Assembly: GCA_002269645.1 (NCBI GenBank)
Contig: NIVC01001504.1
Span: 124,001 to 188,000 of the forward strand
Direction: 5' to 3'
Length of the DNA stretch: 64,000 bases
DNA from: Macrostomum lignano
Lineage: Eukaryota
The notes below the pieces were generated by a model that was not told where the DNA came from, searched no databases, and saw nothing but the letters and a program-made list of their open reading frames with translations. The position numbers and the translations under genes were made by a program. Within the stretch, counting starts at the first letter, position 1. The number at the start of each line of letters is the position of its first letter. Below are positions 3,649 through 26,565 of this stretch, one piece after another.

Positions 3649-5582
3649 AACACAACAACAACAACAAAATACGCTGTCATGATGGTAAAAGTCAGCGTCA
3701 CAGGGCGCGCTTCATGGCTTGGGCGCGAACAAAGGCCGCGCCACCGGCAGTGTCCGGGGCGCCGGCGTCAGCCAGCAGACAGTCGACATAACGCCGAGTT
3801 CGCGCTTGACCTCGCCGGTAGGGTGCCTGCAGCGTGAGCAGCAGCACCTCCTGCACCGGCTGTGGGCAGTACGACTCGGCGCGGATGAGATGGCCTGCGA
3901 GCTGGAGTCGCCGACGGCGCAGTAGATCACTTGGACGTGGCAGGCCAGCGCGGCGATAGAGTGCCGCGTTGGTGACTCGCTCGACGCCGATGTTGAAGGC
4001 GGCGCGCAGCAGACCAGCGTGCGCCGCATCGACTTGCTGTTCGAGTGAGTCCGTCAGCGTCCAGGTCTCGGCGTTGTACAGCAGGACGGTCTCGATTACC
4101 GCCTGGAACAGCGCCGCCCTCTGGCGGTCCGGTAGGGCCTCGGACTGCAGGACTGCCCTCACAGAACGAAAGGCAGCCCAGGCAAGCCCGCGGCGGCGTC
4201 GCAGGTCCTCGCGAGCGTCTGGAACCAGACCGCCGAGGTAGACGAACTGCTGACATCGCGGGAGTTCGGTCGCCTCCCCGTCAGCGCCTCGGCAAAATAT
4301 TGCAGCCTCGATGTCGTCCGGCACGCAGAGCACAACGGTCTTCTGCGTGTTGACCACCAGGCCGACACTCGCCGCAACGGCAACCAGCCTGTCCAGCTGC
4401 CGTTGGGCGCCCTCGACGGTCGAGGACAGCAGGGCGAGGTCGTCGGCGTAGCCAAGCACGCTGAGCCGCTTCTCCGGTTGACGTCGACCCACGCGTCGCT
4501 GCAGCAGAAAACCGTCGTCGTCGGTAGGAAGAGCAGTCCGCAGCACCCAGTCAAGCACCAGGACGAACAGAAACGGCGCCAGCGTATCTCCCTGAAGCAC
4601 TCCGGAGGATGTCTCAAAGGAGTCCGATAGGCCGTCCGGTGTTGTCACAGCAGCTGTCGTATCACGGTACATCGCCATGACGGCGGAGATCAGCTGCTCA
4701 GGCACGTTGTACGCGCGGAGCACCATTGGAAGCACGGCTCTGACAACCGAGTCGAATGCCTTCTTGAAATCAATAAAGATTAAAATCAGGATCGACTGAC
4801 GAATCCGCGCCTCCTCGATGACTCGGCGAAGAGCCAGGATCTGCGCCACTGTGCCGCGATGGGGCCGGAACCCGTTCTGCTCTGGGCGCAGGTACGGATC
4901 CAGCACGGGCTGCAACCGCGAAAGCAGCATCCGGTTGAACAGCTTCGCTGCACAGGACTGAAGGCAGATGCCTCGATGGTCTTCAAGCCTAGTGGTGCCC
5001 GGCTTCTTTGGAACAGCGACGATGTGCGCCGTGGTCCATTCGTTGGGCGCCGCCTCACCGAAGAGCACGCGGTTCATCACTCTGGCGACCTCAGCGGCCA
5101 CACAGGGGATGCGCAGCGCCTCGATGGGCACCTCGTCCGGACCCAGCGCTTTCCCGCCCGGTGACTGCTGGGCGAGCTTGACAACGTCGGCTGCGTTGAC
5201 TGGGGCTACGCTGAAACTCTCCTCTGCCGGCAGCGGCGTCTCCGGCGGCAGCGTCAGACTGTCTGGCAGCGGGGGTGGCGGCGCGTTGACGATGGCGGCG
5301 AAGAACTCGCGCAGCTCGTTCCTACGCTCGTCCGGCGTGTCACCAGCCAGGTTCAGCGGATTGCGCCGCTTTCGTCCCGTCAGAGCGTTGATGGCGGACC
5401 AGGCCACGCGCCCTCTGGCATCGGCCCAGCGGCAGAGACAGCCTGAATGGCGTCATCGACAGCCGCTTGTTGGCGCTGCAGGTAGACAGCTGCCAGAGCT
5501 GCCTCTGCCTCGCGGGTTGGTCGCCTGCTCAAGCGGAGCTTCTCCAGATCTTCCCTCGCTGCCTGAATCGCGTTTTTGCCTA
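3649..5582 (-). mobile_element. 5'-truncated non-LTR retrotransposon (RTE-like)
   Basis: RT ORF inside; (TTG)n tail on the minus strand at 3649-3666; identical 11-bp flanks AATTTTATAAC at 3638-3648 and 5583-5593 (TSD); no endonuclease domain present. Confidence 0.9.
3698..5407 (-). CDS. LINE reverse transcriptase domain (569 aa ORF; coding sequence continues to about 5575 across a 1-bp frameshift near 5425)
   Basis: Motifs PGPD-like ALGPDEV, IVAVPKK, RGICL, EQNGFR, FIDFKKAFDSV, GVLQGDTLAPFLF, GYADD, YLG, and the RTE-type C-terminal RRLQLAGHLIR. Confidence 0.92.
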   Translation of the reverse strand: MAWSAINALTGRKRRNPLNLAGDTPDERRNELREFFAAIVNAPPPPLPDSLTLPPETPLPAEESFSVAPVNAADVVKLAQQSPGGKALGPDEVPIEALRIPCVAAEVARVMNRVLFGEAAPNEWTTAHIVAVPKKPGTTRLEDHRGICLQSCAAKLFNRMLLSRLQPVLDPYLRPEQNGFRPHRGTVAQILALRRVIEEARIRQSILILIFIDFKKAFDSVVRAVLPMVLRAYNVPEQLISAVMAMYRDTTAAVTTPDGLSDSFETSSGVLQGDTLAPFLFVLVLDWVLRTALPTDDDGFLLQRRVGRRQPEKRLSVLGYADDLALLSSTVEGAQRQLDRLVAVAASVGLVVNTQKTVVLCVPDDIEAAIFCRGADGEATELPRCQQFVYLGGLVPDAREDLRRRRGLAWAAFRSVRAVLQSEALPDRQRAALFQAVIETVLLYNAETWTLTDSLEQQVDAAHAGLLRAAFNIGVERVTNAALYRRAGLPRPSDLLRRRRLQLAGHLIRAESYCPQPVQEVLLLTLQAPYRRGQARTRRYVDCLLADAGAPDTAGGAAFVRAQAMKRAL

Positions 5583-6503
5583 AATTTTATAACCATTTAG
5601 GCAAAAACTTATTTTGCTACTGAAAAAGGCCTCATTTTTTGAAAAAAGAATGAAAAAGATCGCCTTTTTTAGTTACATCTACTTATGTGTGGTACGAGCT
5701 ATAAGCAGTTTTTGTTTTTGCCATAGAAAGCAGAGCTCCTTCATACCGCCATCAATTAAGACATCACTTCAAAAGTGATGCGCAAGGCTCCAAAGTTTGC
5801 GTAAATAATAATGACCACGCAAATTTTGGCGCGAATGATCATTTAGGAGCTACATGTTCATGCAGTGGTCATTTGTTTACATGAAAACTCGTTAAGTGCT
5901 CACTAAGCTTCACATCTCACCCCTACTTCCATGACTCACTCAGCTTCACAGCTTCCCTCCTATGACTTATTCAGCCTTGCAGCGTCCATGGCTCTGTGGA
6001 CACTAGCCGAGTCCTCTTTGCCACCTTCCATCTCTCATTCGCGCCGCCCGGGCACCACAGAAGAGCAAAAATGACGTCCCAAATCACGTGAATTTTCTCC
6101 ACGTGTACCGCGGTGCCCCAGCTTGTTCTTCCACGTGGCGTGCTGGTTTTGCCTGTGCCAGACAGAAATTGTCTTTGACTGTGTCTTTGAGCTGCTCTAG
6201 TCCGACACGCCAATTAGAAAGTCGCTACGAGTTCGAGCGGCTTAAAGTCGGTCTGCGGCAGCTGCTCCCCGAAACTCGAATAGTGGGACGCGAGTAATTA
6301 AACAGATGCGCGCAGTCGCTGCCTCGCGTGCCCGCCAGCAGCTGCCGCGAGTGGCCGACAGGCCGGCAGCCCCCGCGCTAATTTGAATTCGAGTGCGCGT
6401 CTGCAAAACACGCCGGCTCGACCCTGACACCTGCCCGCCTGCCAGCGAGGGGGGGGGCTTAATGAGGCTCCGCGAATGCGACCGCGTCTGCTTTCCGCAC
6501 GTA

Positions 6504-7811
6504 CGAGGGATACTCCAAAAGTTTTGCAATTCAACCACTTACGCAAGTCGCACAATCTTCAAAACCAACTCTCTGTACAATAAACATGTACATAGTCACC
6601 ACCTCAATTTTCAAGTGAATTCATACATATACGCCTGCTCAGCCCCCAGTCAAAGTCAGAGACTCCTTAACTGTACAGCTGCAGCCATGGAATTGAATCG
6701 TGAGCAGAATCGGCTACTAATTTGGTACTGCCACAAGCGAAAAGCTCACGGCGCTTGAGACTCATGCCGAGCTACTAGCAACATTGGAGGCTCAAGCGCC
6801 GTCATATGCTACGGTTACACGCTGGTACCGCGAGTTCCAGGCCGGCAGGACCAGCTTTTCTGACGACCCCCGGCCCGGGAGACCTCCGACAGCAGTGACG
6901 GAGGAAAACATCGCTGCAGTGCAGGAGCTGATTCATCAGGATCCGCGAATCACCACGGACATGCTAGCTATGAATGTCGGCATTGGATCGGCAGCGGTCG
7001 ATACGATTCTACACGATCACCTGAGAGTCAGGAAGCTTTGTGCCCGATGGATACCCCACATCCTGACAGATGCTCAAAAACAGGCCCGCATGGAGTTCTG
7101 TCAGTTTCTCATCGATCGATATGAGCACGGGAGCCATCAGCGCCGCTCTGAGGTCATCACTGGTGATGAGACGTTTCTGTATCATTTTGACGTCGAGACA
7201 AAGCGCAGCAGTGCAGAGTGGGTGCCGGAAGGTGGTCAACGACCCCTGAAAGCAAGGCGGTCCCGGTCCCAGGGCAAGCGGATGTTTGCCATCTTCTTCG
7301 ACTCACAAGGCGTGGTGGCGATGGTGAAGCTGGAGGGTCAAGCTACAGTCACTGCTCGATGGTACACTGAAGAGTGCTTGCCAGTCGTGATCGACAGCGT
7401 GACCCAGAGGGCGCCAAGGACGGGAATGCGAGGGCGGAAGCTTCACCATGACAACGCCCCCGCCCACACGGCTGCTGCAACTCGAGCGTTCCTGGACCAA
7501 GAGGGCATTTCAACGCTACCACACCCGGCCTACTCACCAGACCTCGCCCCTGCGACTTCTGGCTCTTTCCAGAAATCAAAAAGTCGCTTAGGGGGCGCAG
7601 GTTTCAGTCCGACGAGGAGCTGGAGCAGGCGGCGAAGGAGGCGATTGACGGCATCCCAATTGAAGACTTCCAGGGCTTGATGAACAAGTGGCTCGGACGA
7701 GCGCACAAGTGTTTGCAGTTCCGGGGAGCCTACTTTGAAGGATTGTAATAGAAAAGTTTGGCAAAATTAACTTTAAATAGTCGAATTGCAAAACTTTTAG
7801 AGTATCCCTCG
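6504..7811 (+). mobile_element. Full-length mariner (DD34D) transposon, 1308 bp
   Basis: TIRs CGAGGGATACTC(C/T)AAAAGTTTTGCAATTC(A/G)AC at both ends, flanked by TA at 6502-6503 and 7812-7813. Confidence 0.96.
6687..7748 (+). pseudogene. Mariner transposase with two single-base frameshifts (about 6742 and 7548)
   Basis: HTH region, RWIPH, TGDET, HHDNA, YSPDLAP(C)DFWLF. Correcting both indels gives one ORF ending ...GAYFEGL*. Confidence 0.92.
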
Positions 7812-9059
7812 TATCTGGGCCAATTTTCGGACTGAGGCGGAGTCCCTGATATCTGCGCCTGCAACAATTCCTGCTTGCCTTCAATGCCGACTTTTACTAG
7901 TATACGTGACCAAATATGACAGCTGTTGGTGCTCATCAAGCCTTCTGCATGTGTCCTGGATAATCTCTACACTTGTCCACCGTCATCTCTGCATGCATGT
8001 ACATCCACTCTGCATTCTTAATGTGTCTAACCTCGGTTTATAAATGTCTGCATGTGATGCAAGGATATCTTATCTTCGATTTGTACCCGTGTTCACGATG
8101 ATGCGTCCACACAATGATTGTTTATGTCCACGAGATGATTCCCACTTCTAAGCTTCTACACACGCGCCAGCAATGTCGGCTGTGGGCTCATGAAAATGTC
8201 CAGGGCCTTTGCAGCAGGTGTCCGCAATAAGAATTGATTGTCAAACGATTCCCAGTCATCTTTGTCGCATAAAACACGCCTCCGCGCTTCACTGCAGCGG
8301 CCGCTAAGCCGGATTTCTACACAGATGAACCGAAATGCGCGGGCTGTGACGGATCGCGGGATCAACGCGGCTCAGTCATGCCGGGATTGGGGGGCGGCGC
8401 CTGCGCGGATTAAAACGAAAGCCCAGCCAGCTACCGGATGGGGAAGTCGCTGGCCGATGAGCTCCCTGATTTATCTGCCGCAGCTGCCCCCCCCCCTGTC
8501 CGGGACGCCCAAGGCTTGGCAAAGAGTTTCTTCGGCCGCAGGAATTGCAGGAAGTTCGGGCAAAAGGACCGGAAGCCGCTGCGCTGAAGCATTCATTCAG
8601 GCTGGCTGGGGAGCCCCGAGATGGAGAGCATCGAAGGGTCCCAGAGGGTCTCTTTGAATCGCTGAGAGAAGAGCGACATCATGCAAATTTAAAATTTTTA
8701 ATAGACTGCAGGTTGCATCAGAAGCCAGTCAAGCGTAATGATTTATAATCAGCTGCTGTGCAATTATTGAGACGCTGGAGACGCTGGGCACGAAGGCGAG
8801 CGCCAGCCTCTTCGCTTCCTCCAATCCGACGCTGCCGCGGCGCCATTGGGCGGGGCTGCTGCAGTAAAAGCTGCCGCCCGCGGCTGCCGCGAGCCGGCGC
8901 GCACTGGTGGGGAGCGAGGCCTGAATTCTCCCTGAGCTCGAGATTTGAATCACCTTAGCTGAGGACTTCGCATACGGTTAGTCTGACTCGCTCGTTTTCG
9001 CTTCCATTGATTTCAAATAGAATAGAATAGTACGAGCGTATTAGTAATAAATCGTGTTC

Positions 9060-9530
9060 ACTGCACTTCCCTTCATTCACAGCGCCTCTCTTCATTCACA
9101 GCGCCTCCCTTCATTCACAGCGCCTCCCTTGATTCACAGCGCCTCCCTTCATTCACAGCGCCTCCCTTCATTCACAGCGCCTCCCTTCATTCACAGCGCC
9201 TCCCTTCATTCACAGCGCCTCCCTTCATTCACAGCGCCTCCCTTCATTCACAGCGCCTCCCTTCATTCACAGCGCCTCCCTTCATTCACAGCACCTCTCT
9301 TCATTCACAGCGCCTCCCTTCATTCACAACGCCTCCCTTCATTCACAGCGCCTCCCTTCATTCACAGCGCCTCCCTTCATTCACAGCACTTCCATTCATT
9401 CACAACGCCTCCCTTCAGTCACAGCACCTCCTTCCCTTCATTCACAGCGCCTCCCTCCCTTCATTCACAGCACCTCCCTCCCTTCATTCACAGCGCCTAC
9501 CTCCCTTCATTCACAGCGCCCCCTTCATCA
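9060..9530. repeat. 20-bp minisatellite (CCCTTCATTCACAGCGCCTC)
   Basis: Read directly; same family as 15170-16430. Confidence 0.95.
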
Positions 9531-9828
9531 AATTTGCACGACTTGCGAGTGTAGCAGATAAATAAAGGAGGAATGAAAGCTCACAGGCTGCTCTAAAGGA
9601 CTGGCAGGCACCATCGTGTCGGATTGAATGTACTCGTACACTTGGCTGCACTGTCTATGGCCGGAAGCAGAGGTTTAACTTAACAGAGCATTGGCTATTG
9701 CACTCTCATGGCACTTGGCGAAACTCAATCCTAATTCCTTCCTGATTCCGAATTTGTTAACCCCTGACTCTTAGCTTCTCAACCCCCTCCGCTCTCTGGC
9801 AGAGCTGCTCGAATAAAAAAGCAGGGCG

Positions 9829-12800
9829 ATGAAGCTGCAGTTGCCACTGCTTCTCCTGCCGCTGCTTCTGCCTCTGTCGGCCGCCACCGCCGCCGCAACC
9901 GCCGCCGCCGCTGCCGATTCGAAGGTCGCGACTGCCGACGCGCTGCAGGCGACGCTGGACGCTCTGACGGCCGCGGTTGATTTTGTCAGCGACAACATTG
10001 ACAGCGTCAACTTGGACGGCGCCATCGGCCTGCGGATGGCCGAGGGTACGCTGGGGCTTCTGGATGTCACACTAACCTGTCACTCTGAATGTCACACTAA
10101 CCTGTCACTCTGAATGTCACACTAACCTGTCACTCTGGATGTCACACACTAACCTGGCACTCTGGATGTCACACTAACCTGTCACTCTGAATGTCACACA
10201 CTAACCTGTCACTCTGGATGTCACACTAACCTGTCACTCTGGATGTCACACTAACCTGTCACTCTGGATGTCACACTAACCTGTCACTCCGGCTGTCGGT
10301 GAATACAAAACACCCCTGATTATTATAAAAGATTATTGAAGTGATCAGAGAAGAGCCGCCCGAACCCGCAGGCCAAACGAAGGCGCTGCTCGCCCACTAC
10401 TGGAGCCGCCTGCCTCAGGGCGCGGCCGCCCGCCTCGCTGAGCTGCACAGCCGGGCCGGCCGAGCCGCCAACCGGGCCGTCCAGTCGGTGCGCAGGCGGA
10501 CGCCGGTGTACTACGCCAGTGAGTGACAGCCGCACCCGTAGAAACAGAAGCCACCCCATTCCGACCAGGGCAGCCCTGGGTCTGAGCCGCTGTGAATCTG
10601 AGATGCGCACTCGCTTGTTGGCTGCAACAAGTCGGCTTCTCCCATCGCATCCTCCATTATCTCTAATCCTCTTGTGATTCTTTAATCCCTTCGTTTCGCA
10701 TGCAGACGCTGGCAAAATGATCCGAGAGCACTTCTGGGACACCTTCTACCCCGCCCGGCCGCTGCCTCGCGCCGCCGTGCGCGCCGCCGACAAGGACAAG
10801 GACTTTGATGAGAAATTCAGCGATGACTGCATCAAAGAGTTTTATGGGCCCGACGGGTGAGTGACGACTCGCTGCTTCTTGTCCCATCAGAGGTTTCTGC
10901 GTTCCTCTTGGGTCTCGTGGGGGTTGAGCGGGCGTGCGCTTTGACTCCATGTTGTAATCGTTCCTGATTTTAACTCCGTGCGTGTGCTCATTGTCCAGTG
11001 CTCACGCTCTATGCTCTACCGTAACTTTAATTAATGTACTTGGTTGGTATTTTAGCCCTTGGGTTGGGGTTGCTGCGATTGAACCTCGTTTATGCGAGTA
11101 ATAAATCGTCTCGTTGTTTGTCACTCGGCACTTTCGTCTCGCCTCGCATACTCTCTGCTCTTGACTTGCTCCTTTAACAGTTCCCTTCCCTGAGCTGTCT
11201 GTGTTTTCTTTTCCCTGAGCTGTCTGTGTTTTCTTTTCCCTGAGCTGTCTGTGTTTTCTTTTCCCTGAGCTGTCTGTGTTTTCTTTTCCCTGAGCTGTCT
11301 GTGTTTTCTTTTCCCTGAGCTGTCTGTGTTTTCTTTTCCCTGAGCTGTCTGTGTTTACTTTTCCCTGAGCTGTCTGTGTTTTCTTTTCCCTGAGCTGTCT
11401 GTGTTTTCTTTTCCCTGAGCTGTCTGTGTTTACTTTTTCCTGAGCTGTCTGTGTTTTCTTTTCCCTGAGCTGTCTGTGTTTTCTTTTCCCTGAGCTGTCT
11501 GTGTTTTCTTTTCCCTGAGCTGTCTGTGTTTTCTTTTCCCTGAGCTGTCTGTGTTTTCTTTTCCCTGAGCTGTCTGTGTTTTCTTTTCCCTGAGCTGTCT
11601 GTGTTCCCTTCCCTGAGCTGTCTGTGTTCCCTTCCCTGAGCTGTCTGTGTTCCCTTCCCTGAGCTGTCTGTGTTCCCTTCCCTGAGCTGTCTGTGTTCCC
11701 TTGCCTGAGCTGTCGTAAGGGTTTCTTTCCCTCTATCATCTACCATGCCCGCCATCATCAGCTGCCCGCCACCATCAGCTGCCCGCCACCATCAGCTGCC
11801 CGCCACCATCAGCTGCCCGCCACCATCAGCTGCCCGCCACCATCAGCTGCCCGCCACCATCAGCTGCCCGCCACCATCAGCTGCCCGCCACCATCAGCTG
11901 CCCGCCACCATCAGCTGCCCGCCACCATCAGCTGCCCGCCACCATCAGCTGCCCGCCACCATCAGCTGCATGCCACCATCAGCTGCCCGCCACCATCAGC
12001 TGCCCGCCACCATCAGCTGCCCGCCACCATCAGCTGCCCGCCACCATCAGCTGCCCGCCACCATCAGCTGCCCGCCACCATCAGCTGCCCGCCACCATCA
12101 GCTGCCCGCCACCATCAGCTGCCCGCCACCATCAGCTGCCCGCCACCATCAGCTGCCCGCCACCATCAGCTGCCCGCCACCATCAGCTGCCCGCCACCAT
12201 CAGCTGCCCGCCACCATCAGCTGCCCCACTCCACCCCACCGCGCCTCTTCAGGAAGTCGCCAGGCTGCTCGGTCTCAGAGCGCTGCTGGCGAGGCCTGGT
12301 GCTGCCCACAGGACTCACGGGCTACTCGCTGACTCACCAGCTGTTCTACCTCATGAACGGCGTCCAGGTGAGGCGTTATACCTGTTGCTCAGTCATAGCG
12401 AAATTTTGATGAAAGTTCCTTAGCTAACAAAACACTTCATGCTGAGGCAAAGCTGCCCCTCTGTTCGGAGAAGGTTTCTTCTTGCAGCTCGAGTCCACTG
12501 CACCGTCCCGCAGGCCGGCTGCCTGTCCAACCTGACCGCCCAGGCTCGCGCCCACCCTCCCGCCGGCACCGACGGCAGTCTGGCCGGCGTCTTCGACAAC
12601 TTCTGCGCAAGGATCTTCGTTGAGGCCAGCAAGCTGGAGACGGCCGGCTTCCCCAAGCCGGACAGGGACCTCTTCATGGAGCAGGGTGAGCAGGGACAAT
12701 GACCTCTTCATTGAGCAGGGTGAGCGGGGTCAATGACCTCTTCATGGAGCAGGGTGAGCAGGGACAATGACCTCTTCATGGAGCAGGGTGAGCAGGGACA

Positions 12801-13639
12801 ATGACCTCTTCATGGAGCAGGGTGAGCAGGGACAATGACCTCTTCATGGAGCAGGGTGAGCAGGGTCAATGACCTCTTCATGGAGCAGGGTGAGCAGGGA
12901 CAATGACCTCTTCATGGAGCAGGGTGAGCAGGGACAATGACCTCTTCATGGAGCAGGGTGAGCAGGGACAATGACCTCTTCATGGAGCAGGGTGAGCGGG
13001 GTCAATGACCTCTTCATGGAGCAGGGTGAGCAGGGACAATGACCTCTTCATGGAGCAGGGTGAGCGGGGTCAATGACTTCTTCATGAAGCAGGGTGAGCG
13101 GGGTCAATGACTTCTTCATGGAGCAGGGTGAGCAGGGACAATGACCTCTTCATGGAGCAGGGTGAGCGGGGTCAATGACTTCTTCATGGAGCAGGGTGAG
13201 CAGGGACAATGACCTCTTCATGGAGCAGGGTGAGCGGGGTCAATGACTTCTTCATGGAGCAGGGTGAGCGGGGTCAATGACTTCTTCATGGAACAGGGTG
13301 AGCGGGGACAATGATCGTAATTCATCCATCTGAAGCTGAACATGCTGCACCCCGCCCCCAGTGGGTCTCTGTGGCCTGGCGGGCTACCCGGAATTCGCCC
13401 GATGGCGCTGGCTGCCGGTGCTGCTGAGCTGGCAGCGGGCCAACGGCTGCTTCGGCGAGTTCCCCGGCGAGCTCATCAATCCTTCGAACTTCGATCCCGG
13501 TCTCTATGGCAACTACAAGCGCAGGAGGAAGCGCGCCGAGATGCGGATGCCGGAGGGCTGCCTGTCACACCGGACCTCGGTGGCCATAGCCGGGCTGACC
13601 GCCTACTGCAGGCGGCTCGTGGAGACGCTCGCCGATTGA
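9829..13639 (+). CDS. C16orf89: UPF0764/C16orf89-like secreted protein, 359 aa; exons 9829-10045, 10372-10518, 10706-10856, 12253-12367, 12514-12685, 13362-13639
   Basis: Six GT-AG exons with compatible phases total 1080 nt. Signal peptide plus family-like motifs recalled from memory: NLDGAIGLR, FDEKFSDDCI, GYSLTHQLFY, RDLFMEQ, LLSWQ..GCFG, GCLSHRTSVA. Confidence 0.85.
10058..10290. repeat. 25-bp minisatellite in C16orf89 intron 1 (TGTCACACTAACCTGTCACTCTGGA)
   Basis: Read directly; also present at 18395-18592. Confidence 0.93.
11185..11710. repeat. 25-bp minisatellite in intron 3 (TTCCCTGAGCTGTCTGTGTTTTCTT), shortening to a 23-bp unit distally
   Basis: Read directly. Confidence 0.95.
11745..12225. 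repeat. 17-bp minisatellite in intron 3 (CCCGCCACCATCAGCTG)
   Basis: Read directly; nearly invariant. Confidence 0.96.
12667..13313. repeat. 34-bp minisatellite spanning the exon 5 / intron 5 donor site, about 19 copies
   Basis: Unit GACCTCTTCATGGAGCAGG|GTGAGCAGGGACAAT; the first copy is the real exon end. Confidence 0.95.
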
Positions 13640-13958
13640 GGAACCCTCCGTGTGCTCGCAGAGAGAATGAAAATAAATTTGGAATTTCGGCAATGAAAAA
13701 GTCCCACCCACAGCCATCTGTGTGACCTGGGGATGCAGCTATTTTTCGGAGCTTCATCAAAAGCAACATTTTCTTTGCTGGCTTGTGGAAGCTTCTTATT
13801 TGGGTTCAGTTCACCATATTCAGTTGAGCCCGGGTTTGCCCCAGTGATAGTCTCAGCTCTGATAGGACAGGCAGGGAGAAGAAATGAATGAAGAAGAACC
13901 CGGCAGCCAATCAGAAGGCGAGGAGGGAGAGGCTTTAAGGAATGAAAAAATACCTTGG

Positions 13959-14006
13959 AGTCCACGAAGAAGCCTGGCCGTAGCGGGTGGGGAAGTTGCC
14001 CAGCAT
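13959..14006 (-). pseudogene. Remnant of MOB2 exon 2 (MLGNFPTRYGQA...)
   Basis: Aligns by eye to 19580-19628 (MLDNFPTRYGQAFLMDF); followed by sequence matching the MOB2 intron. Confidence 0.8.
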
Positions 14007-14007
14007 G

Positions 14008-14335
14008 TGAGCGCACCCAACCCACCAATTATCTCCGCTGAGCTCCCAGTGTACAGTGGCGCATCCACCCCACCAATTATCTCCGCTGGGGTCCCAGTGT
14101 ACAGGGCGCATCCACCCCGCCAATTATCTTAGCTGGGGATCCCAGTGTACAGGGCGCATCCACCCCGCCAATTATCTTAGCTGGGGATCCCAGTGTACAG
14201 TGGCGCATCCACCCCACCAATTATCTTCGCTGGGGTCCCAGTGTACAGTGGCGCATCCACCCCACCAATTATCTTCGCTGTGGTCCCAGTGTACAGTGGC
14301 GCACCCACCCCACCAATTATCTCCGCTGGGGATTC
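14008..14335. repeat. 48-bp minisatellite, about 7 copies
   Basis: CCCAGT(GT) recurs at 14045, 14093, 14141, 14189, 14237 and 14285. Confidence 0.93.
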
Positions 14336-14788
14336 AAGTGCTGATTCAAATCGTTGATTTATCAACTGACTTCAACAAAGCATTCGCCTTCAGTCCATTA
14401 AAACAATTGAGCAGAATTTACAGCCCACTGACTCGAGCATTTGCCCTCACTGCGACACGCACCGACTGGCTTCTTTTCAGCTGAAAGCCATTAATCGGCA
14501 GTCACGGTCTGAGCGATTTTAAAAAGCATTGAAAACAATCGGAGAAAGCATAGCCTGGAGCTCGAAGGTAAAAAACCAGAGCTCGCGCTAATTGCAATAC
14601 CTGCCTGCCAATCGCCTGAGCCACTCAGCTCGATTGGAAATGATTGCAAGCAGAATTTTCCCCCACTCAACCGGTAAGAGAGAGGCGCCTTGTCTAGACT
14701 GCTCAGACTAAAATCTGCCGAGTTAACCTAAGCCGTAAATGAAGCATACGAGCGCCGTAGTCTCGAGATGGTCTCGCTTTTGATTCAT

Positions 14789-14960
14789 GAGTCCGAGCTG
14801 CCCCCTCAATGAGTCCTCAGACTGAGAGCTGCCCCCTCCCCCCTCAATGAGTCCTCAGACTGAGCTGCCCCCTCAATATTAATGAGTCCTCAGACTGAGC
14901 TGCCCTACCCCCAATGAGTCCTCAGACTGAGCTGCCCCCTCAATGAGTCCTCCGACTGAC
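14789..14960. repeat. About 29-bp repeat (GAGTCCTCAGACTGAGCTGCCCCCTCAAT), 5-6 copies
   Basis: Read directly. Confidence 0.88.
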
Positions 14961-15169
14961 TCACTTTGCTTCACACCCCTTCACGCGCTGGTGGGGAGCG
15001 GGTCCTGAATTCCCCCTTAATCTCGAGACCGCCTTGGCTGGGGACTTCGCATAAGGTTAGCCTGACTCGCTCGTTTTCTCCAATGGGTTCAAATAGCTCA
15101 CTTAAGGACTCATTGAGCGCGGCAGATAGGTCTGAGTATTAGTTATAAGATAAATAATCATGTTTACTT

Positions 15170-16430
15170 GCGCTCTCCCTTCATTCACAGCGCCTCCCTT
15201 CATTCACAGCCCCTCCCTTCATTCACAGCACCTCCCTTCATTCACAGCACCTCCCTTTATTCACAGCACCTTCCTTCATTCACAGCACCTTCCTTCATTC
15301 ACAGGGCCTTTCTTCATTCACAGTGCTTCTTTTCATTCACAGCGCCTTCCTTCATTCACAGCACCTCCCTTCCTTCATTCACAGCACCTCCCTTCATTCC
15401 CAGCGCCTCCCTTCATTCACAGCACCTCCCTTCATTCACAGCGCCTCCCTTCATTCACAGCGCCTCCCTTTATTCACAGCGCCTCCCTTCATTCTTTCCC
15501 TTCATTCTCAGCACCTCCCTTCATTCTTTGTTTCATTCACAGCACCTCCCTTCATTCACATCACCTCCCTTCATTCACATCACCTCTATTCATTCACAGT
15601 ACTTCCCTTCATTCTTTTCCTTCATTCAAAGCACCTCCCTTCATTCACAGCGCCTCCTTTCATTCACAGCACCCCCTTCATTCACAGCGCCTCCCCTTCA
15701 TTCACAGCACCCCCTTCATTCACAGCACCCCCCTTCATTCACAGCGCCTCCCCTTCATTCACAGCGCCTCCCCTTCATTCACAGCACCCCCTTCATTCAC
15801 AGCACCCCCCTTCATTCACAGCGCCTCCCCTTCATTCACAGCGCCTCCCCTTCATTCACAGCACCCCCCTTCATTCACAGCGCCTCCCCTTCATTCACAG
15901 CGCCTCCCCTTCATTCACAGCGCCTCCCCTTCATTCACAGCACCCCCCTTCATTCACAGCGCCTCCCCTTCATTCACAGCACCCCCTTCATTCACAGCAC
16001 CCCCTTCATTCACAGCGCCTCCCCTTCATTCACAGCGCCTCCCCTTCATTCACAGCACCCCCCTTCATTCACAGCGCCTCCCCTTCATTCACAGCGCCTC
16101 CCCTTCATTCACAGCGCCTCCCCTTCATTCACAGCACCCCCCTTCATTCACAGCGCCTCCCCTTCATTCACAGCGCCTCCCCTTCATTCACAGCACCCCC
16201 CTTCATTCACAGCGCCTCCCCTTCATTCACAGCGCCTCCCCTTCATTCACAGCACCCCCCTTCATTCACAGCGCCTCCCCTTCATTCACAGCGCCTCCCC
16301 TTCATTCACAGCACCCCCCTTCATTCACAGCGCCTCCCCTTCATTCACAGCGCCTCCCCTTCATTCACAGCACCCCCCTTCATTCACAGCGCCTCCCCTT
16401 CATTCACAGCGCCTCCCCTTCATTCACACA
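15170..16430. repeat. 20-22-bp minisatellite (CCTTCATTCACAGC-GCCTCC/ACCCC), degenerate on the left and homogeneous on the right
   Basis: Read directly; paralog of 9060-9530. Confidence 0.95.
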
Positions 16431-17289
16431 CCTCTTCGTCAATTCAACAGCTAATAATAATGCAATTTGTGCTTGTCAAGCTCTCTGTCAGGACAGCAGC
16501 TGGCATGCAGATGCTTCAGCTACATGCTGTGCACGGATCGCACAGGTGCGCCAGTTTTGATTTACATAAAAATCTGCTCTGGCGTAGCGCGAACAGGCGG
16601 CCCTCGCATTGTTTCTTGGCTGCATGGCTTAGTTAAATGTTGCAGCATTTTCAAGTATTGATCTTTGTTTAGCAAATTTTTAGGTTATTATAACAGTAGG
16701 AATATCAAGCCACTACACGCCCGTAAAAAACACCAAGACATTTTTCTTGCTGCACCCCAACGGAGCAACCCAGGAACACGAAATTCGAATTGGATTTTAC
16801 AGTAATTGCGAGAACGCATTCAGTGCAAACCCTTCTGCGCCAATCAGCACTGCGCCTCAGTGCAGCCTTGCCAAGCTTTCAGATTTCACCAGCAGGTTTA
16901 CCGCATGTGTCTGCATCAGCTCTGACTTCAGTGGCCACAGGTAATTGCCCGGGTAGAGCTTCTGAACCTTTGGAGACCTTGTTGCGACTGTGTCCTGCAG
17001 TCTAATGTCCAATGGGCATTGTACAATGTCCTCTACCCAATGTCATAAATTTTTCTGGCAAGTCCTGATTATTGGCAAACCTCAACTGCTGAACTTTCTC
17101 AGCTAGTCTTTCAAGCATTCAGTCATCATCCTGACGCTGTCGGCATCTTCAGCATGAGGCACTGGCTACATACCGTAATCAACCTGCTGGATACTCTGTA
17201 ATTCTCGCAGTTCAGTAAATAACTGTGGCATAGAATTTTAGATTCATGAGACTGCGCGATTGGGTCTCTGTGGATAGTATTCTCTCTGC

Positions 17290-17640
17290 ATCTCTAGAGA
17301 GATAGATAGCATCTCCTTATCTCCCTGCATCTCCTTATCTCCCTGCACCTCCCGTCTCTCTGCATCTCCCGGCTCCCTGCATCTCTTTATCTCCCTGCAT
17401 CTCCCATCTCTCTGCATCTCCCGGCTCCCTGCATCTCCTTATCTTCCTGCACCTCCCGTCTCTGAGCATCTCCCAGCTCCCTGCATCTCTTTATCTCCCA
17501 TCTCTCTGCATCTCCCGGCTCCCTGCATCTCCTTATCTCCCTGCATCTCCCGTCTCTCTTCATCTCCCGGCTCCCTGCATCTCCCGTCCCTCTTCATCTC
17601 TCGGCCGTTCCCTGCATCTCTGCGTCTCTCTGCATCTCCC
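17290..17640. repeat. Degenerate pyrimidine-rich repeat (CTCCCTGCATCTC core)
   Basis: Read directly. Confidence 0.85.
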
Positions 17641-18394
17641 GTCTATCAATATACGCTCGCATTTGCACACCAGCCTAACAAACGAGGCCGGTAGAGCCGC
17701 CCGCAGTGAGAGTGGCCGCAGGGATTCCAGCAGTCCCAATCAATCTTCCCTGCATCGGAAGCAGCTGGGCCGGGCCGGGGGTGGCGAAGAGGAAGCGGCG
17801 GGCAGCGGATCGCCCGCCACGATAAGCCCAGGTGCCCGACCGCCTCACCCGTCCTCACAAGATGTAGAAAATGTTGATCCGAGAGTCTGGATGCATGGGA
17901 TGCTGGGCCACCCCCCTCCCCACCGATACCCCGCTGATCAATGAGTCGCAGCTCTCGCACCGAGAGCAGCATTGCAGTTTATTGCGGAACGCAGACGCGA
18001 AGCCCCACAGCGGAACTTCAGCAACAAAAGCAGCAGCTGCTTTCGCTGCGCTGAATGCGGACAGCGGGCTCTGAAGCCTTTGTGAGACATTGCTGAACTA
18101 GAAATAGAAATTCATTCGCTTCATTCTCTCTCAGAATGTCTTTGAATTCTGCTAAGCTCTACGTTATTTTGCGCAAGTCCCGCTCTGCTTCAACTCCTAT
18201 AAGTACCAAAATGCAGTGGAACCAAATTATTCTAGGATCTTGAGTAGTGCGAATTTCCTAGTGAATCTGGCCAATGCGTTTTGCAGCAAAAGCAGACCTG
18301 CACTGAAATTTGCACGACTTGCGAGTGTAGCAGACGAATGAAGGAATGAAAGCTCACAGGATTGGCAGGTACTGCATCGTGTCGGAGGGAATAG

Positions 18395-18592
18395 CCTGTC
18401 ACTCTGAATGTCACACTAACCTGTCACTCTTACTGATACACTAGCCTGTCACTCTGAATGTCACACTAACCTGTCACTCTTACTGATAAACTTGCCTGTC
18501 ACTCTGAATGTCACACTAACCTGTCACTCTGAATGTCACACTAACCTGTCACTCTTACTGATACACTTGCCTGTCACTCTGAATGTCACACT
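18395..18592. repeat. Second copy of the C16orf89 intron-1 minisatellite
   Basis: CCTGTCACTCTGAATGTCACACTAA units interleaved with a TTACTGATA variant. Confidence 0.9.
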
Positions 18593-18595
18593 AGG

Positions 18596-18727
18596 GAGAC
18601 CAGGCAGCCAATCAGGAGGCGAGGAGGGAGAGGCTACAAGGAACGAAGAGAGACCAGGCAGCCAATCAGGAGGCGAGGAGGAAGAGGTTACAAGGAACGA
18701 AGAGAGACCAGGCAGCCAATCAGGGGG
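18596..18727. repeat. 54-bp repeat with a CCAAT motif, 2.5 copies
   Basis: GAGACCAGGCAGCCAATCAGG at 18596, 18650 and 18704. Confidence 0.9.
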
Positions 18728-19337
18728 CGACCAAAGACAGACTCTGCATTGTTCGGCCGGGTTCCAGTCCAAAAGACACTGAAATAACAAACACACGCAG
18801 GGCAAGAAAAGCACGATTAGATACAGGCTAATCCAGTTAAATAAAGCATCATAATGCGCCTATTTGGATAGGCAAGATATATATTGTGCATTGATACAAA
18901 GGGACTCTGAAACTGTCGCTAGAACATCAGCGGCAAGTCAGTCAGATCAGGAATAGGTGCAATAATAGTTAACAAATTGCTCTAAGGTGCGAGGCCAATG
19001 AAAAACAAATGAGGCGAAGGCCCGGGCCGCAGGGCGTCTTGTGTACAAACTCAGTTAGCGCCGCGAATGCATCCAGTTTTTAGGGATCATAAATCATCAG
19101 CTCGAGCATCTGGGTTACGCAGATAAATAGTTAGACATCGGAGCGGGGTGGATCACAGCTGTAGAATTCGGATTAACAGCGGGTCGGAGGGGAATCAGAC
19201 CCTGGGACAGCGAGGCGTGGCAGCCCCAGAAATGAAAAAGACCAGGGCCCAAAGCTGAAAGACCAAGATGGAGCAGCCTTGCCAAGTCTGCGAAGGTCAT
19301 GGGCTTCAGAGGAGGCCGGCTGGCCGATCCCGGCAGC

Positions 19338-20480
19338 TCAGGCGGTGGAGCAGCCCGCGCCATCCACCGGCCGCATGAGGGCCGCCTGCAGATCCGCCAG
19401 CACTTCAACGTCCTTGTCGTCCACAATGCGGAATTTCAGGTTGAACGCCAGCAGGTGCCGCGCCACCGTGTTCAGGTGAGGCGTCAGGTCCATGCGGAGC
19501 ACGGAGTCAAAGTGGCAGGCGTACACGTGAGCCAGGATGTGCAGCAGGTGCCGCAACACGCAGGCGGACACGGCGTGGAAGTCCATGAGGAAGGCCTGGC
19601 CGTAGCGGGTTGGGAAATTGTCCAGCATCTCCTGGCACTGCGTCAGCAGGCTGTCAATGTGGTTGCGGGCCGAGGACCGGGCCTGCAGGGGTTCGGCGTG
19701 CGAACAAATGAGCTGTGCTCAGACTGGTCTCTTGTGAAACTGCGGAAAATGGCGCACCCACCGCACCAATAATCCCCGCTGGGAATCCCGGTGTTGATTT
19801 AAATCGTTGATTGATCAATTGATTTCAACAAAGCATTCGCCTCCAGTCCATTAAAAATTAGAGTAGAATATACAGTCTATTGAGTCCTCAGACTGAGCTG
19901 CCATGGTGGAGTTGCTGATGTCTTTTTACTGATCTAAAATCACGCATCAAATCGCCTATGCAAATACGCAAGCAAATAAGCAAAAAACTCATAGTGAAGA
20001 CTCACACTATTCCAAAAGTATTCACCAGCCTCATCTAAGCCATAATGTATCAAATTTAAGTGCAATTTCACTCCCGAAACCCTGAACGCCTGAGAACTAC
20101 AGTAACACTGACTGCATACAGATTCTCACAAGCCATCAGAAAATGCGCACCTTCTTAGTCTTTTCTTCGGGAGCGCAGAAGTTCACCCCGCCCGGCCCGG
20201 TGAACTTCTCGCAATTGCAGAAGTCGTACACGGCCTCGAACACCGTGCTGACGTTCTCATACAGGGCGCACACGTGGGTGGCCACCCATTCATTTTGCTG
20301 CAGCAGCAGCGGCTGCTCAAGCAGCTGGTCCAGATCGGTGCCCAGCACAATCTGCTTTGCCGCGTGCTCCGGCTGGGTGTACAGACGGCACTCCTCGCTG
20401 CTGTTGTTACCGGCAGACGACGGGCTGCGGTCGGCGGCTGAGCTGGGCCGGCCGCGGGCCTTGCCGATTAACCAGTCCAT
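19338..20480 (-). CDS. MOB2: MOB kinase activator 2, 224 aa; exons 20480-20151 and 19682-19338
   Basis: N-terminus MDWLIGKAR resembles MOB2 MDWLMGKS; NEWVATH, FPTRYG and RHLLHILAHVYACHF motifs; phase-0 GT-AG intron. Confidence 0.9.
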
Positions 20481-22655
20481 GCGGCCGCGGCTGTCTGTGG
20501 GAAGGCGAAAAATAATTAGGCGCTCAATGCAGACTACTGATAATAGCAAGTCAGTAGCACAGAGAATATCGCTTGTAAATTCTGCTTTCGCACAGTAAAA
20601 GAAAAGCAATACAATTTTTTTCCTAAACCCAGTGTTCGGTATGATTGTTAATATTTGATTGGAGTCAAGACCTTGTTTAGTCCCCACCCAAGACCCAATT
20701 AGTAGTGTATAAAAATCGAATTGGGTTGAAATATTATTTAAGACAAGGATCTATATATGATTATTGGGATGCTAAGATTCTTCGATTGGGATTAGGATCA
20801 AATATGTTGTAGTCTATAATATGAGCTACTGAGTACATATAATGACAGCTATACCTCTTCACTAAGCATAAAAGCATGTATGCTAGAATATTTTTCCTTA
20901 TAACTGTTATCATTTATTTGTATTTTATAAAAAAGAATACATGTGTTTTTGGTGCCCACATATAGTGTCATATTTTGAATCAAATTTTTACCACAGATAG
21001 GAGGCCTGATGTTACAACTGGCAAAATGAATTAGTGCCCATTCTGCTAACTCCTCTGAGTAGACACACCACAGATATGTATGCAGTTATATGCACAGGCA
21101 CATGCTCACAAGAGTGTACAGTAGCCCTAACTTTATTTATTGTTAGGCATGTACACTTCTCTATACCTTGGAGATTAGACTTAAAGGATGTTTATTACAC
21201 AAGCAGGTCAAAGCTGAGATTTAAATTTAGTCCTAAATTTTAATGTTATTGCACTTAGAATTGAGCCTAGGTTGCTGGCTTATAAGAGTACTTTGTTAGA
21301 CCAATAGGTTATAGTCCCCTTGTTCAATTAATATTAGTCTATAAAAATAGCATCACTTAACTTAAGAAAAGAAAAACATCAAAGTCTTATACAGTAGATC
21401 ATAGTCTAAAAGACATTAGATTAAAGCTATCCTAATCAGTTTTTTGTATCTTGTATTTCAGAATGTTCAAGATAAATTGCTCACTAGTGCATGCCATAGA
21501 GTGGCAACTTTTCAATGTTGTTGAGTATATATAAAAAGCATATATATTCTTAGAACCTATGAATTGAAATTGGTACTTTGTTGCTAAGTATATTTTTTAA
21601 ATGTATATGTATATTATTATATATTTATATTTAAAAAAAGATTTTTCATTAATGCACTAATATGATAGAAGCTACAAATGTGATCTTATAGTCAAAATTT
21701 AAAAGTCATGTCTATGGGCTTTTGAATATCTATGCTGCAGAGCTATTTTTTCAATATGTAGCCACGCACTTAGTGAGTATAGCAAATTGTGTGCTACTTA
21801 TCTCCAGAAGATGTAGTGCATGCCAGAATTTTCCAGCATGCATTTAAAAATGTTAATGTACATGGCATGCATAGTAAAATATCAACATGCATGGCATGCA
21901 ATAAAAAGAAAGTGTAGTAATCAGGGTGCACAATTGCCTTACAATCTATATTACAACATGCCAGTGTGAGGCATATGATGGATAGACATTAAAGTTATTT
22001 GCAGTGAAAAGCAGAATATATTTACAATTTGAGAAAAAAATTAGAAAAGCAGTTTTTTCTATAGGTGTAAATATACATGCGCAACAGTCGGCCGAGTCGG
22101 CCGATCTGGATGACTGATTTGGCAGCCAACCAAGGTAAATCGCAAAAATGCCCACCTCAAAGAATATGGACATAGTACTAATTAGATGACAAGGCATTTA
22201 GCCTTTATATAAGACAGTCATAGTTACTCCTACTGTTTACCCAAAATTGCGTTCATTTTGCTTTAAGGTTTCTTTCATAGGTAAGTCACATTTTTGGTCA
22301 AAAATTATGTTGCATTTTTGTTAAAACTAAGTTGCACAGCCAACTGAATTTTTGAGGTTGCACATGTATGGGTATAAAGTTAAAAAAAGGACATGTATTT
22401 AATCAAGAATCTACAGGCATAAACAGTTTGTTAGTAGCAGCCGAAAAATGTTCCCATGTGGCCAGCACATCCACAAGACTTAAGACTATAGAGTATCATA
22501 TTATATTTTTTAGCAAAAGAGCTTTCTTTGAGCTATCTTTTGTTTATCATTTTGGAAAATGTTTTCTTCAACTTCTTGTACTATATGGCTCAAGTGCAAT
22601 GGAAAGTTCATTATTTAATAAAATAATTTTATATAAGAAGATAGAGACTAGAGCC

Positions 22656-24479: not shown

Positions 24480-24630
<151 letters not shown>

Positions 24631-25189
24631 TCCCGTCTCTCTCATAGCACAGTGCTAATCCTAGTAATAATATCGCTTAAATATATAATATCGCTTGCAT
24701 TATACACTGTACTGTACTCGCGTGTATTCTAATGCGCCTCTATGTGCATATTCGTTTTAGCACATCTTCTCTTCGGATTCATACATTCATTTTAAAATGC
24801 AATGCATATAGTTCAGCCTACCCACGTTTTATCACCTCGCTCTACTTTTCCACACCTCGAGCACGTTGTGCTCACAACACAATACATACTGCGGTATGTA
24901 CTGGCCTGTGTTTAGTGTTTCATATTCGATCTCCCACTGCTTGAGATTTACACCTGTAATTGATTTGACACGACAATGCATTAGTTGTACAGGTTAACTC
25001 GCAAAGCTGGGTATTAGTAGTCAAGGCCGTCCTTCTCTGAATACATTTATAAATACATGTACGAGCTGCCTACATGTACATGTAACTTTAACTGCGCTGC
25101 GATTTACCAACTTTTACCAACACATCATCTGAAGAGGATCAATACTATAATTTGTATCTTAATTCGACAATGCAAAGCGACACCTTTAA

Positions 25190-26565
<1,376 letters not shown>

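What the first reader, a model, noticed from the sequence alone, without database searches (positions are those of the whole stretch)
8904..19905. Tandem duplication of the C16orf89/MOB2 block with reciprocal gene loss
Seen: collinear matches 8904-9000 to 14988-15095; 9060-9530 to 15170-16430; 9531-9625 to 18307-18384; intron-1 array 10058-10290 to 18395-18592; 13890-13945 to 18600-18650; MOB2 exon piece 13959-14006 to 19580-19628; 14335-14430 to 19790-19885; 14811 to 19882. Copy 1 keeps C16orf89 and only a 48-bp scar of MOB2. Copy 2 keeps MOB2 and has lost every C16orf89 exon. Inference: duplication then complementary deletion restored one working copy of each gene but left duplicated upstream sequence between them.
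Basis: partly seen in the sequence, partly recalled or inferred. Interest (0 to 1): 0.7.

Follow-up and report, generated by a model that had tools for sequence, protein, structure and literature searches.

The report
Old decayed tandem duplication in flatworm
A roughly 5-6 kb stretch of the flatworm Macrostomum lignano genome, holding a C16orf89-like gene and the last exon of the neighbouring MOB2-like gene, was duplicated in tandem long ago and the redundant parts have since been deleted; this is real but ordinary genome decay.

Summary
Window 8903-14959 (copy 1) and 14985-19902 (copy 2) share eight collinear, same-strand blocks. The unique-sequence blocks are about 88% identical. Nothing else in the 64-kb window matches them.

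The window is Macrostomum lignano contig NIVC01001504.1. Copy 1 holds an intact 6-exon DUF4735/C16orf89-like gene (+, 9829-13639) and a 51-bp relic of MOB exon 2 (13956-14006). Copy 2 has no DUF4735 exon and ends inside the single intron of an intact 2-exon MOB2-like gene (-, 19338-20480).

Two other contigs of the same assembly carry the same structure and the same junction sequence. One of them is about 4% diverged. Copies at the same position in different contigs (orthologous) are 96-98.5% identical, against 87.6% between copy 1 and copy 2. The duplication is therefore one old event that predates the split of the subgenomes. It is not a mis-assembly and not a set of dispersed repeats.

The interpretation needs one correction. 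MOB exon 1 lies outside the duplicated unit, so the simplest history never made a second whole MOB2. There were two DUF4735 genes and one orphan MOB exon, and both redundant pieces decayed by deletion. A larger duplication followed by a deletion across the junction cannot be excluded. Interest is low.

The parts
8903..14959 (+). Copy 1 of the tandem duplication (about 6.06 kb)
   Evidence: Collinear blastn blocks. The left edge of homology is at 8903/14985. There is no homology further left.
14960..14984 (.). Junction between the copies: about 25 bp of filler (CTCACTTTGCTTCACACCCCTTCAC) with no counterpart at either outer boundary
   Evidence: The same junction sequence is present in L001 and L005, with one C/T difference.
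14985..19902 (+). Copy 2 of the tandem duplication (about 4.9 kb). It ends inside the MOB intron.
9829..13639 (+). Intact DUF4735 / C16orf89-like gene of 359 aa. Exons: 9829-10045, 10372-10518, 10706-10856, 12253-12367, 12514-12685, 13362-13639. All introns are GT-AG.
   Evidence: Pfam PF15882, E=1.2e-41. Exon model differs by 1 aa from P0004. The predicted N-terminus looks like a signal peptide; this was read from the sequence and not tested.
19338..20480 (-). Intact MOB2-like gene of 224 aa. Exon 1 is 20480-20151, the intron is 20150-19683, exon 2 is 19682-19338.
   Evidence: Pfam PF03637, E=4e-32. Contains P0001 exactly. Best solved-structure relatives are MOB1A/B and yeast Mob1/Mob2.
13956..14006 (-). 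Relic of MOB exon 2 in copy 1 (51 bp, encodes ...MLGNFPTRYGQA...)
   Evidence: blastn 86.8% to 19576-19628. tblastn 14033-13971, E=1e-4. It also matches the paralogue's exon in L004.
8903..9020 (+). Anchor A, copy 1 (upstream of DUF4735). Its partner is 14985-15096.
9057..9528 (+). 19-bp minisatellite, copy 1 (24 units). Its partner is 15170-16451 (66 units).
   Evidence: Unit numbers in L001 are 33 and 34; in L005 they are 11 and 136.
15170..16451 (+). 19-bp minisatellite, copy 2
9522..9629 (+). Anchor B, copy 1. Its partner is 18297-18392 (about 90%).
9630..10058 (+). Copy-1 sequence missing from copy 2 (429 bp: 5' flank, the whole of exon 1, and 13 bp of intron 1)
   Evidence: copy 2 passes from 18392 straight into the 25-bp array.
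10059..10297 (+). 25-bp minisatellite in DUF4735 intron 1, copy 1. Its partner is 18392-18593.
18392..18593 (+). 25-bp minisatellite, copy 2. It is the only remnant of the DUF4735 gene body.
10298..13868 (+). Copy-1 sequence missing from copy 2 (3.57 kb: exons 2-6, three intronic arrays, start of the 3' flank)
   Evidence: No sensitive blastn hit to copy 2.
16452..18296 (.). Copy-2-only segment (1.85 kb, contains the 17-bp array 17320-17644). Origin unknown.
   Evidence: No match to copy 1. No Pfam, Rfam or tRNA hit. No terminal repeats. Present in copy 2 of L001 and L005.
13869..13954 (+). Anchor C, copy 1 (single 54-bp unit containing GCCAATCAG). Its partner is the 2.5-unit array 18596-18730.
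18731..19575 (.). Copy-2 sequence missing from copy 1 (845 bp: MOB 3' flank plus the 3' 238 bp of exon 2)
14011..14331 (+). 48-bp minisatellite in copy 1 (6.7 units). One unit lies in the window's MOB intron at about 19750-19790. L005 has 9.9 units in its MOB intron.
14297..14423 (+). Anchor E, copy 1. Its partner is 19750-19875, inside the MOB intron.
   Evidence: (85.8%, E=2e-33)
14801..14959 (+). 35-bp motif array at the end of copy 1 (4 units). A single unit lies at 19881-19902 at the end of copy 2. L005 has 26 units.

Best explanation
This is a relic of one old local tandem duplication in Macrostomum lignano.

Ancestral state (inferred): a DUF4735/C16orf89-like gene and a MOB2-like gene lay tail to tail, with their stop codons roughly 0.9 kb apart.

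The duplication (shown): a segment was duplicated head to tail. It started about 925 bp upstream of the DUF4735 start codon (window 8903) and ended inside the single MOB intron (window 19902).

Immediate result (inferred): the outer context of both genes stayed intact, and two redundant items were created. One was a second complete DUF4735 gene, lying between the first DUF4735 gene and MOB. The other was an orphan copy of MOB exon 2 without exon 1 or a promoter.

Decay (the deletions are shown, their neutrality is inferred): neither redundant item was needed, and in a genome with very high indel turnover both were removed.
- Two deletions took DUF4735 exon 1 (429 bp) and exons 2-6 (3.57 kb) out of copy 2.
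- Deletions and array growth removed all but 51 bp of the orphan MOB exon from copy 1.

What remains: short unique anchors at about 88% identity and four minisatellites. The minisatellites have expanded and contracted independently in each copy and in each subgenome.

The feature does not carry out a function. It is a structural fossil that lengthened the spacer between two convergent genes from roughly 1 kb to 5.7 kb.
For: 1. Eight collinear, same-strand blocks with sharp outer limits. No other copies exist in the window or in the paralogous locus.
2. One block is a piece of MOB coding sequence in the expected position and orientation. A repeat-family explanation does not predict this.
3. The same structure and the same junction sequence occur in three contigs of assembly GCA_002269645.1: the window itself (100% identical to L003), L001, and L005.
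4. Anchors are 98.5% (copy 1) and 96.4% (copy 2) identical between the window and L005, but 87.6% identical between copy 1 and copy 2 in every combination. The Jukes-Cantor distances are 0.136 against 0.016-0.037. The duplication is therefore several times older than the split of the subgenomes.
5. Both genes are intact with GT-AG introns in the window and in L005. Most differences are synonymous for MOB (9 synonymous, 3 non-synonymous) and they are mixed for DUF4735 (6 and 5).
6. MOB exon 1 lies outside the unit and has no relic in copy 1.
7. Published context: M. lignano has three subgenomes about 2% apart in SNPs but more than 30% apart once indels are counted (PMC10733133). Simple and tandem repeats make up 15% of the genome (PMC5730564). 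This fits fast decay driven by deletion.
Against: - No outgroup locus was available, so the single-pair ancestral state is inferred and not observed.
- A larger duplication that included all of MOB, followed by a deletion spanning the junction, would give exactly the same present-day structure.
- Whether the 1.85-kb copy-2-only segment is an insertion into copy 2 or a loss from copy 1 is unknown.
- The junction carries about 25 bp of unexplained filler, so the mechanism of duplication (unequal exchange, end joining or template switching) cannot be read.
- No transcript data were examined, so 'non-functional relic' is an inference from the lack of ORFs, domains and annotated genes.
Confidence: 0.7

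Rival explanations
1. The duplicated unit originally contained both whole genes. Copy 1 later lost MOB2 and copy 2 lost C16orf89 (true reciprocal loss). The present junction at 14960-14984 is then the scar of a deletion that removed the rest of MOB from copy 1, together with the start of copy 2.
For: The locus shows at least four other large deletions between the copies. The genome is known for heavy indel turnover. One more deletion across the junction is therefore not far-fetched, and it would leave the structure seen. The unexplained 25-bp filler at the junction is compatible with a secondary event.
Against: It needs one more event than the partial-duplication model. No trace of MOB exon 1, or of sequence upstream of 8903, exists near the junction in any of three contigs. 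Even in this version MOB in copy 2 was never broken, so nothing was 'restored'.
Confidence: 0.22
2. Assembly artefact: two haplotypes or homeologues of one locus were joined head to tail by the long-read assembler.
For: The assembly is known to be redundant and partly chimeric between subgenomes. The locus is 44% tandem arrays, which are hard to assemble.
Against: - The two copies are only 87.6% identical in unique anchors and differ by kilobase-scale deletions. Real homeologues here differ by 0-4%.
- Three separately assembled contigs, which carry different transposon insertions and array lengths, share the structure and the junction.
Confidence: 0.02
3. The shared blocks are members of dispersed repeat families (a composite transposon or minisatellite-bearing elements) that happen to lie in both places. 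They are not a duplication of this locus.
For: 39% of the window is minisatellite. Transposons are frequent here. Copy number across the whole genome could not be measured with the tools at hand.
Against: - Seven or more blocks lie in the same order and on the same strand (about 3e-6 by chance).
- One block is MOB coding sequence and another is MOB intron.
- No further copy exists in the other 50 kb of the window or in the 20-kb paralogous locus.
Confidence: 0.03

Closest known systems
Tandem segmental duplication followed by loss of the redundant copy (non-functionalisation, the commonest fate of gene duplicates)
   Same: There are two adjacent head-to-tail copies and a single junction. Divergence between the two copies is greater than divergence between homeologues. 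One copy of the duplicated gene is kept under constraint and the other is destroyed.
   Different: The redundant gene was removed almost entirely by deletion, not left as a point-mutated pseudogene. Its only remnant is an intronic minisatellite. Only about 15-20% of the unit can still be aligned.
Reciprocal gene loss after duplication (described mainly after whole-genome duplication, for example in yeasts and teleosts)
   Same: Today each copy holds a different one of the two genes.
   Different: Reciprocal loss needs both genes to be complete in both copies at the start. Here MOB exon 1 lies outside the unit, so a second complete MOB probably never existed. The two 'losses' lie within one haplotype, a few kb apart. 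They are not between populations or subgenomes, so the usual consequence (hybrid incompatibility) does not apply.
Partial gene duplication with a breakpoint in an intron (orphan exon relics)
   Same: The distal breakpoint lies in the MOB intron. Copy 1 carries only 3'-exon sequence with no promoter or first exon.
   Different: The orphan exon has been cut to 51 bp and is flanked by an expanded 48-bp array. There is no sign that it was recruited into a chimeric transcript.
Homeologous structural divergence in neopolyploid M. lignano (PMC10733133)
   Same: The three contigs differ mainly by indels, array lengths and transposon insertions, with few SNPs, as that paper describes genome-wide.
   Different: The duplication is older than that divergence and is shared by all three copies.

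Membership tests
Tandem segmental duplication | Two adjacent copies with several homologous blocks in the same order and orientation | tested here: met
   All hits are plus/plus and collinear.
Tandem segmental duplication | Homology ends at the outer boundaries, and there is one novel junction between the copies | tested here: met
   The junction sequence is shared by three contigs.
Tandem segmental duplication | The blocks are locus-specific, not dispersed repeats | tested here: inconclusive
   There are no other copies in the 64-kb window or in L004. The whole genome could not be searched.
Tandem segmental duplication | The duplication is real in the organism (independent support) | tested here: met
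   Three contigs with different array lengths and transposon content carry it. Raw reads were not examined.
Reciprocal gene loss | Both genes were complete in both copies right after the duplication | tested here: not met
   MOB exon 1 (20151-20480) lies outside the unit and no relic exists in copy 1. This cannot be strictly excluded if a later deletion crossed the junction.
Reciprocal gene loss | Each copy lost a different gene | tested here: met
   Copy 2 lacks all DUF4735 exons. Copy 1 keeps only 51 bp of MOB exon 2.
DUF4735 / C16orf89 family (Pfam PF15882) | Profile match above the curated cut-off over most of the domain | tested here: met
   143.6 bits against a cut-off of 31.2, profile positions 24-281 of 283. 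All homologues found carry PF15882. That PF15882 is the human C16orf89 family is from my own knowledge; no paper was found linking the two names.
MOB kinase-activator family (Pfam PF03637 Mob1/phocein) | Profile match above the curated cut-off | tested here: met
   111.9 bits against a cut-off of 27. PDB relatives are MOB1A/B, Mob1 and Mob2.
MOB2 subfamily | Closer to MOB2 than to MOB1, MOB3 or MOB4 in a proper phylogeny | tested here: inconclusive
This is a lead, not a test.
Haplotype mis-join (assembly artefact) | The two copies are as similar as haplotypes or homeologues (at least 96%) and have the same gene content | tested here: not met
   87.6% identity in anchors and kilobase-scale differences in content.

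The most novel reading that the evidence does not exclude
The minisatellites may be more than passive survivors. About seven of the roughly 17 boundaries between homologous and non-homologous sequence lie within 4 bp of an array edge. Four arrays have outlasted almost all the unique sequence around them at about 13% divergence. One reading is that arrays in this genome start or guide the deletions that remove redundant DNA, and that they regenerate themselves. They would then be the main driver of the very large indel divergence reported between M. lignano subgenomes. A related possibility is that the duplicated upstream blocks kept in copy 2 serve as a spacer or terminator between the convergent genes.
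Probability: 0.12. Interest if true: 0.45.

Novelty: new member of a known kind. Interest (0 to 1): 0.18.

Why it matters
It matters little beyond this locus.

- It is a clean, datable example of how a small tandem duplication decays in a genome with extreme indel and minisatellite turnover. The redundant gene is excised rather than left as a pseudogene, and arrays are the last landmarks.
- For annotation, the 5.7-kb spacer between the two convergent genes is a relic and not a missed gene.
- The MOB-like 51 bp at 13956-14006 should not be called an exon.
- For M. lignano genomics, it shows that all three subgenome copies share structural features that predate polyploidy. These can serve as markers of homeology.

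Tried and rejected
- Rfam at permissive E-value on 7000-22000: no hit.
- tRNA/tmRNA scan of the whole window: none.
- Six-frame Pfam scan of the copy-2-only 1.85 kb: nothing. Terminal-repeat search there: no transposon signature.
- Bacterial promoter/terminator scan: irrelevant for a flatworm, so ignored.
- Sensitive blastn (word 7) for hidden DUF4735 remnants in copy 2, and for homology beyond the unit's edges: none.
- Search for conserved DUF4735-MOB linkage: the M. lignano MOB paralogue locus (L004) has no DUF4735 within 10 kb. The Adineta vaga DUF4735 locus has no MOB neighbour. The Owenia protein could not be located.
- Homologues from other Macrostomum-like sources (P0003, P0005) sit on contigs of 0.7-1.6 kb, so no outgroup locus could be read.
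- Microhomology at the breakpoints: TGGTGG occurs at both 8906 and 19904. Because the junction has 25 bp of filler, I give this no weight.
- Literature search for DUF4735 together with C16orf89: no paper.
- Test of whether copy-1 anchors are more conserved than copy-2 anchors between homeologues: 7/452 against 15/412 mismatches, Fisher p=0.055. This is suggestive only.
Full report
**Source and genes**

The window is animal DNA, not prokaryotic. The two predicted proteins have their best database matches in Macrostomum lignano. Window 9338-22000 is 100% identical to contig NIVC01001504.1 of assembly GCA_002269645.1 (Mlig_3_7), in reverse orientation.

Mapping the M. lignano proteins onto the window and testing splice sites gives two intact genes.
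- A DUF4735/C16orf89-like gene on the + strand: 359 aa, six exons (9829-10045, 10372-10518, 10706-10856, 12253-12367, 12514-12685, 13362-13639), all introns GT-AG. Pfam PF15882 scores 143.6 bits.
- A MOB-family gene on the - strand: 224 aa, exon 1 at 20480-20151, one intron at 20150-19683, exon 2 at 19682-19338. Pfam PF03637 scores 111.9 bits. The best solved relatives are MOB1A/B and yeast Mob1/Mob2.

The MOB protein aligns better, and over its full length, to human MOB2 than to MOB1A. The two genes are convergent, and their stop codons are 5.7 kb apart.

**The observation**

Written as copy 1 / copy 2:
- Anchor A: 8903-9020 / 14985-15096.
- 19-bp minisatellite: 9057-9528 (24 units) / 15170-16451 (66 units).
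- Anchor B: 9522-9629 / 18297-18392 (about 90%).
- 25-bp minisatellite of DUF4735 intron 1: 10059-10297 / 18392-18593.
- Anchor C, a 54-bp unit: 13869-13954 / 18596-18730 (2.5 units).
- A piece of MOB exon 2: 13956-14006 / 19576-19628 (87%).
- A 48-bp unit: 6.7 copies at 14011-14331 / one copy near 19750-19790.
- Anchor E: 14297-14423 / 19750-19875 (86%, E=2e-33).
- A 35-bp motif: four copies at 14801-14959 / one copy at 19881-19902.

All blocks are on the same strand and in the same order. A self-comparison of the whole window finds no other partner for any of them. Sensitive searches find no homology to the left of 8903/14985 or to the right of 14959/19902. The chance of that order and orientation arising from unrelated repeats is about 3e-6.

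**What each copy lacks**

Copy 2 lacks two stretches of copy 1.
- 9630-10058: 429 bp, comprising the 5' flank, all of exon 1 and 13 bp of intron 1.
- 10298-13868: 3.57 kb, comprising exons 2-6 and three intronic arrays.

The intron-1 array is therefore the only remnant of the DUF4735 gene body in copy 2.

Copy 1 lacks two stretches of copy 2.
- 18731-19575: 845 bp, comprising the MOB 3' flank and the 3' 238 bp of exon 2.
- 19629-19749: the 5' 54 bp of exon 2, the splice acceptor, and the start of the intron. In copy 1 the 48-bp array sits in this position.

Copy 2 also has 1.85 kb (16452-18296) with no partner in copy 1. This segment has no Pfam, Rfam or tRNA hit and no terminal repeats. Copy 1 has 377 bp (14424-14800) with no partner in copy 2.

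**Is it real, and how old is it?**

The assembly holds two further copies of the locus.
- NIVC01001057.1 (L001) is essentially identical to the window in unique sequence. All five anchors are 100% identical, and there are 6 mismatches in 3.3 kb of flank. It differs in array lengths and by kilobase-scale indels.
- NIVC01000020.1 (L005) is about 4% diverged in unique sequence.

Both have copy 1 and copy 2 with the same blocks and the same missing parts. Both also have the same junction, GACTGA(C/T)TCACTTTGCTTCACACCCCTTCACGCG|CTGGTGGGGAGCGGG.

Between the window and L005, anchors are 98.5% identical (copy 1 to copy 1) and 96.4% identical (copy 2 to copy 2). Copy 1 against copy 2 is 87.1-87.7% in all four combinations. 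The Jukes-Cantor distance is about 0.136 against 0.016-0.037.

There was therefore one duplication event, several times older than the divergence of these homeologous copies. This divergence fits the three-subgenome structure published for the sequenced DV1 line: about 2% SNP divergence but more than 30% once indels are counted (PMC10733133). The assembly is also known to be redundant (PMC5730564).

These results rule out a mis-join of haplotypes, because the copies are far too different and the structure is replicated in three contigs. They also make a dispersed-repeat explanation very unlikely, especially since one block is MOB coding sequence that also matches the paralogue's exon.

**Interpretation**

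The right edge of the unit (19902) lies inside the MOB intron. MOB exon 1 and everything upstream of it lie outside the unit, and no relic of exon 1 is found in copy 1 of any contig.

In a tandem duplication A-[B..C]-[B..C]-D, the first copy keeps its original left context and the second keeps its original right context. The simplest history therefore produced:
- two complete DUF4735 genes;
- one untouched MOB gene;
- one orphan MOB exon 2.

The inner DUF4735 copy and the orphan exon were redundant and were removed by deletion. The outer DUF4735 and the real MOB stayed under constraint. Both are intact in the window and in L005. Codon differences are 9 synonymous to 3 non-synonymous for MOB and 6 to 5 for DUF4735. 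Coding divergence is 1-2%, against about 4% in the flanks.

'Reciprocal gene loss that restored one working copy of each gene' overstates it: MOB was probably never duplicated whole and never broken.

One caveat applies. A larger duplication followed by a single deletion across the junction would leave exactly the same structure. The locus clearly deletes readily, so I give that version about 0.2.

**Comparison with known things**

This is an ordinary fate of a small tandem duplicate (non-functionalisation), combined with a partial duplication of the neighbouring gene. Two details are unusual: the redundant gene was excised almost completely rather than left as a pseudogene, and minisatellites are the most durable landmarks.

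The DUF4735-MOB adjacency is not conserved in the M. lignano MOB paralogue locus (L004) or in Adineta vaga. No outgroup locus from another Macrostomum species was reachable with these tools.

**Novelty and score**

This is a new instance of a known kind of feature, with no functional element implied. It would not surprise a specialist in a genome with 15% simple and tandem repeats and massive indel divergence. Interest is about 0.18.

The most novel reading still open is that the arrays themselves guide the deletions, since about seven of the roughly 17 block boundaries lie within 4 bp of an array edge. This count is confounded, because the arrays are themselves the surviving blocks. It would need a genome-wide test.

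Noticed in passing
window 12660-13314 (and L001 12983-13739, L005 12605-13427): The 34-bp minisatellite in DUF4735 intron 5 begins inside the 3' end of exon 5. Every unit repeats the exon end plus the splice donor (CTCTTCATGGAGCAG|GTGAGC). The gene therefore carries 19-24 tandem copies of its own donor site in all three homeologues. Reading through the first donor meets a stop codon within a few codons. How the spliceosome picks the first donor is not obvious.
   Followed up: partly
window 6502-7813: A Tc1/mariner-type DNA transposon with 40-nt terminal inverted repeats and an ORF carrying HTH_32, Transposase_1 and DDE_3 domains (6784-7680, +). It is absent from the same site in both other homeologous contigs (L001, L005), so it is a recent private insertion.
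   Followed up: partly
window 24146-27218: A 3.07-kb element bounded by 99-nt inverted repeats (96% complementary) that contain 15-bp subterminal arrays. It encloses a FLYWCH zinc-finger ORF (25870-26487, +) and is probably a DNA transposon. The MOB paralogue locus L004 also has a FLYWCH gene 3.3 kb upstream of its MOB gene.
   Followed up: partly
window 3698-5407 (-): A 569-aa ORF with a reverse-transcriptase domain (RVT_1, E=2e-28). This is retroelement sequence upstream of the duplicated block.
   Followed up: no
whole window 1-64000: 39% of the window lies in tandem arrays with period 7 or more, in dozens of distinct minisatellite arrays (108 partly overlapping TRF rows). Many are 0.5-2 kb long with 90-98% unit identity, for example 39150-41309 (60 bp x 36), 52093-54020 and 55333-57255 (33 bp x 58). 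This is well above the 15% simple and tandem repeat content reported genome-wide.
   Followed up: partly
window arrays compared with L001 and L005: Array copy numbers differ strongly among the three homeologous contigs while flanking unique sequence is 96-100% identical. Values are given as window/L001/L005. 19-bp array of copy 1: 24/33/11 units. 19-bp array of copy 2: 66/34/136. 48-bp unit in the MOB intron: 1/1/9.9. Junction motif: 4/4/26. The MOB intron is 468 bp in the window, about 990 bp in L005, and 58 bp in the paralogue L004.
   Followed up: partly
window 13905-13925 and 18596-18730: Anchor C contains a perfect CCAAT-box-like motif (CAGCCAATCAG). It is present once in copy 1 and in each of the 2.5 units of the 54-bp repeat in copy 2, and it lies between the 3' ends of the convergent genes. 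No function was tested.
   Followed up: no
window about 21592-21594 compared with L001 21391-22687: L001 carries about 1.3 kb that the window lacks just upstream of the MOB gene. It also has a further 1.3-kb length difference before window position 3165. These are more indel polymorphisms between near-identical contigs.
   Followed up: no
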